Assembly (NCBI RefSeq): GCF_016432865.1
Contig: NC_067404.1
Span: 84,692,001 to 84,756,000 of the forward strand
DNA: 64,000 nt
Direction: 5' to 3'
DNA from: Antechinus flavipes
Lineage: Eukaryota
Part shown: piece after piece, positions 39,250 to 40,520 of the stretch
Numbering within the stretch: the stretch's first letter is position 1
Layout: every line of letters starts with the position of its first letter
Program-made: the position numbers and the translations under genes
Notes under the pieces: model-generated
Databases searched by the model: none
Seen by the model: the letters and a program-made list of their open reading frames with translations, nothing else
Told to the model about the DNA's origin: nothing

Positions 39250-40520
39250 GGGCGGGCGGGAGGGGTGGGCCACTACAGCGTCACTGCGCGCATCACAGGC
39301 TTCACGAGAAACTCCAACACACGCCAAGCGGCGGCACGAGGGTCACGGGCAGGCACACGGACGGCACACTGACACGCACGCGCACAAGGGGGAGAGAGGA
39401 AGGAGCGCCCGGCCGAGGGTACTGGGAGTGCTCGGTGATTTGCATATTTAAAGACACAGCCATCCCGGGTGCTGAGGAGGCCTTGGAGGCCTGGGGGGGA
39501 TCACACCTCGGGGGGGAAGGGGGAAAGGAGTGGGGAATCAGTCGGAGAAGAGGCTCGCGAAGGATTTCCTCAGGCTGCGGATGGTCTCCGCCTTCACCTC
39601 GTCCTGGCTAAGGCTGGGCCGGGGCGGGGCCTGGGCGGGTCTGGAAGGTTGAAGGTATTGGTCAGAGACTGGGATTTGCTGAAGAGAAACAAGGCGGGCG
39701 GAGGGAGGGAGGAGGGGACGGGGGCGGGACGAGACCGGGAGGAGGAGGGGGAGGAGAAGGAGGAGGAGGAGGGAGAGAAACACAGAGTTACCGCGGGGCG
39801 GGGACCCGGGCTGGCCCCGCTCCGGCCCGCTCACGCCCCGCCCATAGGAGGCCCCGCCCCCCGGCCAGAGGCCCCGCCCTTACTTCAGCTGCGGGGCCGC
39901 GGCCGGCGCGTCCTGACTCGGCTTCTGGGCGAGCTGGGGTTTAGGCTGCCCGGGCCCGGCGGGGCCGCGGCCCTGGCCCTGGCCCTGGGTGCTGGGCCGC
40001 GGTTGCTGTGTGGTAGGTGGCCCGGCGACTGGGCCGGGGCGGCCGGCCTGGGGGCCCGCCTGGCTCAGCTGCCGGGTGGGGCCTGCGGGCGGCCCGGGCG
40101 GCGCTCGCTGCGGAGCCCTCTGCGGACCCCCGGCTGCCTGGCCCCGGGCGGGTCCGGCCTGGCGCGGCTGCGGCTGCGGGGACTGGCTACCCTGGCGCGG
40201 TCCCTGGGTGGCCGCGGCAGGTTGCGGCGGCTGCGGGGGTTGCGAGGGCGGCTGCGGCTGCGGTGACTGCGCTTGCTGCGGGGCACGCGCCTGCGGGGCG
40301 GCCCCCGAACCCGCCGGACGTGGCTGGCGGCCGGAGCCCGACGGTGCCTGCCCGCTGGGGCTGGGGAGGCGCGGCTGCGCCGCCACGGCCGCCTGAGGGC
40401 CCAGGCCCTGGAGCGGCTGGCCTTGAGGCGGGGGACGCTGCTGGGAAGGGGGGCCGTGGCGCTGAGGTCCAGGCCCGGGCTGCTGGGGGCCCCCTGCGAG
40501 TGAAACACACACGCATGCGC
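39250..40520. other. 3' CpG island over SYN1 exons 12-13 and 3'UTR
   Basis: Very high GC and CpG density by inspection. Confidence 0.75.

What the first reader, a model, noticed from the sequence alone, without database searches (positions are those of the whole stretch)
39538..39678. SYN1 exon 13: Ia and Ib acceptor reading frames appear swapped by a 1-nt difference
Seen: the Ia acceptor (39678) reads [28 protein letters not shown] (stop 39596-39594) and misses domain E. The Ib acceptor, 38 nt downstream (39640), reads [34 protein letters not shown] and carries the domain-E tail. The summed CDS through the Ia acceptor is 2165 nt, not a multiple of 3. Adding one C to the C-run at 39637-39639 restores both canonical products (Ia ...[18 protein letters not shown]..., Ib [11 protein letters not shown], like human KASPAQAQP*). 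Inference: most likely a consensus error in a GC-rich homopolymer. If real, the isoform logic of synapsin I is rewired, splitting the KSQSLTN motif from the vesicle-clustering E tail.
Basis: partly seen in the sequence, partly recalled or inferred. Interest (0 to 1): 0.7.

Follow-up and report, generated by a model that had tools for sequence, protein, structure and literature searches.

The report
One-base gap in SYN1 last exon
The last exon of the synapsin I gene in this marsupial assembly lacks one base, so the two protein tails swap splice sites. This is most likely an assembly error, but the reads that would prove it could not be examined.

Summary
SYN1 lies on the minus strand. Exon 12 ends in phase 2 at 39884, and two AG acceptors lie 38 nt apart, giving exon starts at 39678 and 39640. 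As assembled, the upstream (Ia) acceptor reads [15 protein letters not shown], then leaves the conserved frame and stops at 39596-39594. The downstream (Ib) acceptor reads the domain-E tail. The exon lengths add up to 2165 nt.

Tasmanian devil, from the same family, has ...[29 protein letters not shown]... in one frame. Opossum, platypus and mouse keep the same arrangement. The window differs by a single missing base at 39636-39639. Restoring it gives the devil Ia tail. If the missing base is a G on the minus strand, it also gives the opossum Ib tail, [11 protein letters not shown].

An earlier scan note names the genome as yellow-footed antechinus. That assembly came from noisy PacBio reads of a male, assembled with wtdbg2 and polished with Pilon, with about 25x short reads on the sex chromosomes.

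Verdict: an assembly deletion (about 0.85). A real deletion limited to Antechinus or to this animal is about 0.12. The scan has not noted this on other DNA.

The parts
39884..40493 (-). SYN1 exon 12 (proline-rich domain D), ending in phase 2 (..CAG CTG AA) before a gtaagg donor
   Evidence: It is 95.7% identical over 211 aa to devil P0202 in one frame. The last residues, [19 protein letters not shown], are identical to devil and opossum.
39641..39680 (-). Upstream (Ia) acceptor AG at 39680-39679, plus the 38-nt Ia-specific segment 39678-39641 encoding (N)[12 protein letters not shown](D)
   Evidence: The peptide is identical to devil P0202, opossum P0121 and platypus P0067.
39641..39642 (-). 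Downstream (Ib) acceptor AG; the exon then starts at 39640
   Evidence: Opossum isoform X2 (P0023) and mouse-type Ib (P0040) show that this acceptor is used and gives a short tail.
39636..39639 (-). Site of the apparent one-base deletion. The minus strand reads ACCC-G here, where opossum is inferred to have ACCCGG and devil encodes D-P-A-Q.
   Evidence: The frame switches between codon GAC (39641-39639, Ia frame) and GCC CAG (39636-39631, Ib frame) when compared with devil [10 protein letters not shown]. The plus strand is GCCTGGGCGGGTCTGGA at 39629-39645.
39594..39596 (-). Stop codon met by the Ia frame as assembled (tail ...[14 protein letters not shown])
39538..39640 (-). Shared part of exon 13. 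The frame that carries domain E (...[25 protein letters not shown], stop at 39540-39538) is reached in this assembly only from the Ib acceptor.
   Evidence: The domain-E tail is identical to devil, opossum, platypus and mouse Ia.

Best explanation
The window carries an ordinary SYN1 gene with the canonical Ia/Ib alternative 3' splice-site arrangement. The assembly has dropped one base in the GC-rich spacer at 39636-39639, just downstream of the Ib acceptor. In the living animal the upstream acceptor would then give synapsin Ia, ...[29 protein letters not shown]...FSD, with domain E. The downstream acceptor would give synapsin Ib, ending [11 protein letters not shown] or [11 protein letters not shown]. 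The apparent swap of tails is a consensus error of a noisy long-read assembly that short-read polishing did not correct.

Shown: the lesion itself, its single-base size, the intact frame in relatives, and the assembly method. Inferred: that the base is present in the animal.
For: 1. The lesion is exactly one base in an otherwise intact gene. All 13 exons align in frame to devil and opossum synapsin I, and their lengths total 2165 nt.
2. Tasmanian devil, in the same family, has ...[37 protein letters not shown]... in one frame (P0202; also P0128 and P0129). If the deletion is real, it is younger than the devil-antechinus split.
3. Opossum Ia (P0121) and Ib (P0023), platypus Ia (P0067) and mouse Ia/Ib (P0056, P0040) all keep the canonical logic.
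4. One added base restores the devil Ia tail exactly. If that base is G on the minus strand, the Ib tail becomes identical to opossum [11 protein letters not shown] (my reading).
5. The site lies in short C/G runs, within DNA that is 65-72% G+C over 200-1600 nt.
6. The assembly was built from about 100x PacBio reads with canu correction and wtdbg2, then polished with Pilon using 50x 100-bp BGISEQ reads. The reference animal is male, and short-read depth on the sex chromosomes is about 25x (PMC9290055).
7. The best short-read holder has only 0.90 of the sampled 31-mers of 38900-40500. That fits local differences or coverage gaps.
8. Unchecked first-reader notes list several other single-base deletions in conserved genes of this genome. 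These are leads only.
Against: Two other frameshifts in this genome were judged real by earlier follow-ups (ICAM1 and IKZF4), so the assembly is not wrong by default. Those two, however, were reported as shared with other dasyurids.

The spacer is a slippage-prone GC-rich repeat that has changed length in evolution: nine residues in devil and opossum, seven in platypus and mouse. A real indel here is therefore mechanistically plausible. The as-assembled state would still produce one isoform carrying domain E, so it need not be lethal.

The species name, and so the assembly method, rests on an earlier scan note. I checked it only for consistency: the years of the holder studies fit, and the sequence is close to devil.
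Confidence: 0.85

Rival explanations
1. The one-base deletion is real. It is either fixed in Antechinus (or a subclade) or private to the reference male. The upstream acceptor then makes a synapsin I that keeps [12 protein letters not shown] but ends in a new 15-residue tail, [15 protein letters not shown], without domain E. The downstream acceptor makes the only synapsin I that carries domain E.
For: The sequence as assembled reads this way. The early stop lies in the last exon, so nonsense-mediated decay is not expected (general knowledge). One product with domain E remains. The spacer has changed length in evolution. Other frameshifts in this genome were reported as real (not checked by me).
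Against: Devil lacks the deletion, as do opossum, platypus and mouse. Domain E is reported to be needed to overcome the block that domain D puts on presynaptic targeting (PMC4673407), and SYN1 is strongly conserved. A single lesion in a short G/C run of a long-read assembly with thin short-read polishing is the typical signature of a consensus error.
Confidence: 0.12
2. The frame is restored in the mRNA by another route, such as a different donor or acceptor, or recoding. The genomic deletion would then be real but silent for the protein.
For: Ensembl devil models P0128 and P0129 show unusual exon 12/13 junctions, so alternative junctions may exist in dasyurids.
Against: No AG in the right register lies near the Ia acceptor. 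The only other AG, at 39670-39669, gives AAT CTC TGA. The GT 34 nt upstream in exon 12 gives a stop after five codons when joined to the Ia acceptor (my reading). Devil P0202 uses the canonical junction. There is no recoding signal and no precedent in synapsins.
Confidence: 0.02

Closest known systems
Canonical mammalian SYN1 Ia/Ib alternative 3' splice sites in the last exon (mouse P0056/P0040, opossum P0121/P0023)
   Same: The same gene by Pfam (Synapsin and Synapsin_C). The same phase-2 end of exon 12, the same two acceptors 38 nt apart, the same KSQSLTN segment and the same domain-E tail.
   Different: As assembled, the register between the acceptors and the two tails is shifted by one base, so domain E follows the downstream acceptor.
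Tasmanian devil synapsin-1, UniProt A0A7N4PHX0 (P0202)
   Same: Exon 12 is 95.7% identical. The end of exon 12 and the Ia segment are identical, and the spacer [10 protein letters not shown] equals the window's two frames spliced at the lesion.
   Different: Devil reads through in one frame. The window needs one more base at 39636-39639.
Residual single-base deletions in noisy long-read (PacBio CLR) assemblies polished with short reads
   Same: One base is missing in a short G/C run, in GC-rich DNA, on a chromosome with half depth in a male reference.
   Different: This is not proven here, because no reads were seen at the site.

Membership tests
Synapsin I gene (SYN1) | Synapsin N-terminal and ATP-binding C domains | tested here: met
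   Pfam PF02078 and PF02750 hit four exon-bearing stretches above their cut-offs. All exons align to devil P0202.
Synapsin I gene (SYN1) | Proline-rich domain D exon followed by a last exon with two acceptors 38 nt apart | tested here: met
   Exon 12 lies at 40493-39884. The acceptors lie at 39680-39679 and 39642-39641.
Canonical Ia/Ib isoform logic | The upstream acceptor reads in frame into domain E | tested here: not met
   As assembled, the Ia frame stops at 39596-39594. The feature is met in devil, opossum, platypus and mouse.
Canonical Ia/Ib isoform logic | The downstream acceptor gives a short proline/alanine tail with an early stop | tested here: not met
   As assembled, the Ib frame reads domain E down to 39540-39538. 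Opossum Ib ends [11 protein letters not shown] and Mus caroli Ib (P0040) ends KASPSQAQP.
Assembly consensus indel | A single-base length difference in a mono- or dinucleotide run relative to close relatives | tested here: met
   The window has ACCC-G, against ACCCGG inferred for opossum from its two overlapping reading frames. Devil encodes DPAQ across the site.
Assembly consensus indel | An assembly method with a known residual indel error | tested here: met
   PMC9290055 describes PacBio reads, canu correction, wtdbg2 and Pilon with 50x BGISEQ reads, with 25x on the sex chromosomes of a male. This holds only if the species named in scan note s1-180307 is right.
Assembly consensus indel | Independent reads of the same species show the missing base | not testable with these tools

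The most novel reading that the evidence does not exclude
The deletion is real in Antechinus flavipes. Synapsin I isoform logic is rewired, so that domain E is delivered only through the downstream acceptor. The upstream acceptor then gives a form that keeps the KSQSLTN segment but lacks domain E. This would be a natural experiment separating the two C-terminal elements.
Probability: 0.12. Interest if true: 0.6.

Novelty: not a real feature. Interest (0 to 1): 0.12.

Why it matters
If this is an artefact, its value is practical. Gene models for SYN1 in this assembly will be wrong: a truncated Ia and a false Ib carrying domain E. The case also adds to signs that GC-rich coding DNA in this assembly carries single-base deletions.

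If the deletion were real, it would be a rare natural uncoupling of the KSQSLTN segment from domain E. Domain E is the element reported to drive vesicle clustering and presynaptic targeting (PMC4673407).

Tried and rejected
The local tblastn used a copy with those places masked.
2. Logan ORF fragments. A word search with exon 12 alone returned nothing among 8000 low-complexity candidates.
3. Exact look-ups. ORFs with GTG or TTG starts may have failed only on their first residue.
4. DNA of relatives. The opossum and wombat loci were found, but no DNA was served because the sample files are too large.
5. A metagenome scan for a 27-nt pattern from 39637-39663 gave no match.
6. I did not run the search of protein representatives. 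The operators marked it as costly.
7. I built no joined (spliced) model and searched none. Only the exon lengths were added.
8. Rescue of the frame by nearby alternative splice sites was considered and rejected by inspection.

Full report
**What is there.** The window carries SYN1 on the minus strand. Pfam Synapsin and Synapsin_C match the exon-bearing stretches. All exons align in frame to Tasmanian devil synapsin-1, P0202.

Exon 12, the proline-rich domain D, spans 40493-39884 and ends ...CAG CTG AA before gtaagg, which is phase 2. Its last residues, [19 protein letters not shown], are identical to devil and opossum, so the incoming frame is secure.

Two acceptors follow. The AG at 39680-39679 gives an exon start at 39678. 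The AG at 39642-39641 gives an exon start at 39640, 38 nt downstream.

- From the upstream acceptor the window reads [15 protein letters not shown], then [13 protein letters not shown], and stops at 39596-39594.
- From the downstream acceptor it reads [34 protein letters not shown] and stops at 39540-39538.

The thirteen exon lengths, taken one by one, add up to 2165 nt, which is 2 mod 3. The only correction is a two-base slip in the coordinates quoted for the plus-strand string. I built and searched no joined model.

**What relatives show.** A word search that used a stop-free read-through of exons 4-5 as query, followed by a second search with the opossum tail, returned synapsin-1 proteins of many vertebrates.

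- Mouse Ia ends ...[30 protein letters not shown]...FSD. The Ib form (Mus caroli, P0040) ends ...PQLKASPSQAQP.
- Opossum X1 ends ...[32 protein letters not shown]... and X2 ends ...[14 protein letters not shown].
- Platypus Ia has ...[16 protein letters not shown]....
- Devil, the same family as the animal named for this genome, has ...[37 protein letters not shown]... (P0202; the same tail is in P0128 and P0129).

The devil spacer [10 protein letters not shown] is the window's Ia frame (D, P) joined to its Ib frame (A, Q, A, P, P, R, P, S). The window therefore differs from devil by one base, lost between 39639 and 39636.

The two opossum tails overlap in two frames, so every base of the opossum spacer can be inferred. 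It begins ACCCGG on the minus strand, where the window has ACCCG. The lost base is therefore probably the second G, which is a C on the plus strand next to 39636. With it, the Ib tail becomes [11 protein letters not shown], identical to opossum. Either choice gives the devil Ia tail.

**Artefact or real.** An earlier scan note (s1-180307) names the genome as yellow-footed antechinus. This fits the holder studies dated 2021 and 2020 and the closeness to devil, but I did not verify it independently.

The genome paper (PMC9290055) reports the following:

- a male reference animal;
- about 100x PacBio reads, corrected with canu and assembled with wtdbg2;
- Pilon polishing with 50x 100-bp BGISEQ reads;
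- about 25x short-read depth on the sex chromosomes.

Opossum SYN1 lies on an 89.4-Mb record, a size that fits an X chromosome. That is an inference, not a result.

The site sits in short G/C runs, in DNA of 65-72% G+C. Short-read coverage and polishing are usually weakest in such DNA (general knowledge). The best short-read holder carries only 0.90 of the sampled 31-mers of 38900-40500.

A single-base loss in an otherwise perfect, strongly conserved exon, absent from a relative in the same family, is the usual signature of a consensus error.

There are reasons for caution. Two frameshifts elsewhere in this genome were judged real by earlier follow-ups, though both were reported as shared among dasyurids, and I did not test them. 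The spacer has also changed length in evolution: nine residues in marsupials, seven in platypus and mouse. And the as-assembled state would still leave one isoform carrying domain E.

**Why there is no direct proof.** The look-up of sequencing runs found 20 holders. From then on I worked beside those places and sent none of their letters to any search tool.

Other routes to independent sequence also failed:

- a word search with exon 12 alone found nothing;
- 17 exact look-ups of neighbouring ORFs found nothing;
- the opossum and wombat loci came back without DNA;
- a metagenome pattern scan was blank.

**Function, for context.** Domain E is common to the 'a' isoforms. It is reported to maintain the reserve pool, to mediate oligomerisation and vesicle cross-linking, and to overcome the block that domain D puts on targeting. 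That block is said to explain why synapsin Ib targets terminals poorly (PMC4673407). A real swap would therefore matter, which is one more reason to expect selection against it.

**Verdict.** An assembly deletion at 39636-39639 has a probability of about 0.85. A real deletion limited to Antechinus or to the reference male has about 0.12. Rescue by other splicing or recoding has about 0.02. Interest is low unless reads show that the assembled length is true.

Noticed in passing
window 39880-39885 (minus strand): Reading through the exon 12 donor gives AAG TAA at once, so a transcript that keeps intron 12 would end ...PQLK with neither tail. Devil Ensembl model P0141 ends exactly that way.
   Followed up: no
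window 39608-39640 (minus strand), compared with proteins P0121, P0202, P0067, P0056: The GC-rich spacer between LP and SLSQDEV is nine residues long in opossum and devil but seven in platypus and mouse. This is a marsupial 6-nt expansion of a CCCCG-like repeat, so the stretch is prone to slippage.
   Followed up: partly
devil proteins P0128, P0129, P0202 (no window coordinates): Ensembl devil models show odd exon 12/13 junctions (QKP-RRGLC-KSQ and KPH-KSQ). They also lack [12 protein letters not shown] at the end of exon 4, which the window encodes intact around 54230-54265. These look like problems in the devil gene models.
   Followed up: no
window 46549-46703 and 52547-52678: Two runs of N (155 and 132 bases) lie inside the 11.6-kb SYN1 intron between exon 5 (ends at 54032) and exon 6 (starts at 42388). 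I did not fill them or look them up.
   Followed up: no
window 48000-50700 and 54400-55400: Long pyrimidine/purine-biased minisatellite arrays give stop-free reading frames of 150-590 codons on the minus strand. One such frame, 55603-53840, contains SYN1 exons 4 and 5. I used it as a legitimate stop-free query.
   Followed up: partly
wombat locus; window intron 54032-42388: In wombat, a TIMP gene lies inside SYN1 on the opposite strand, and a RAF-type kinase gene lies tail to tail just after SYN1. The opossum locus shows the same kinase neighbour. This matches the layout that first-reader notes give for this window.
   Followed up: no
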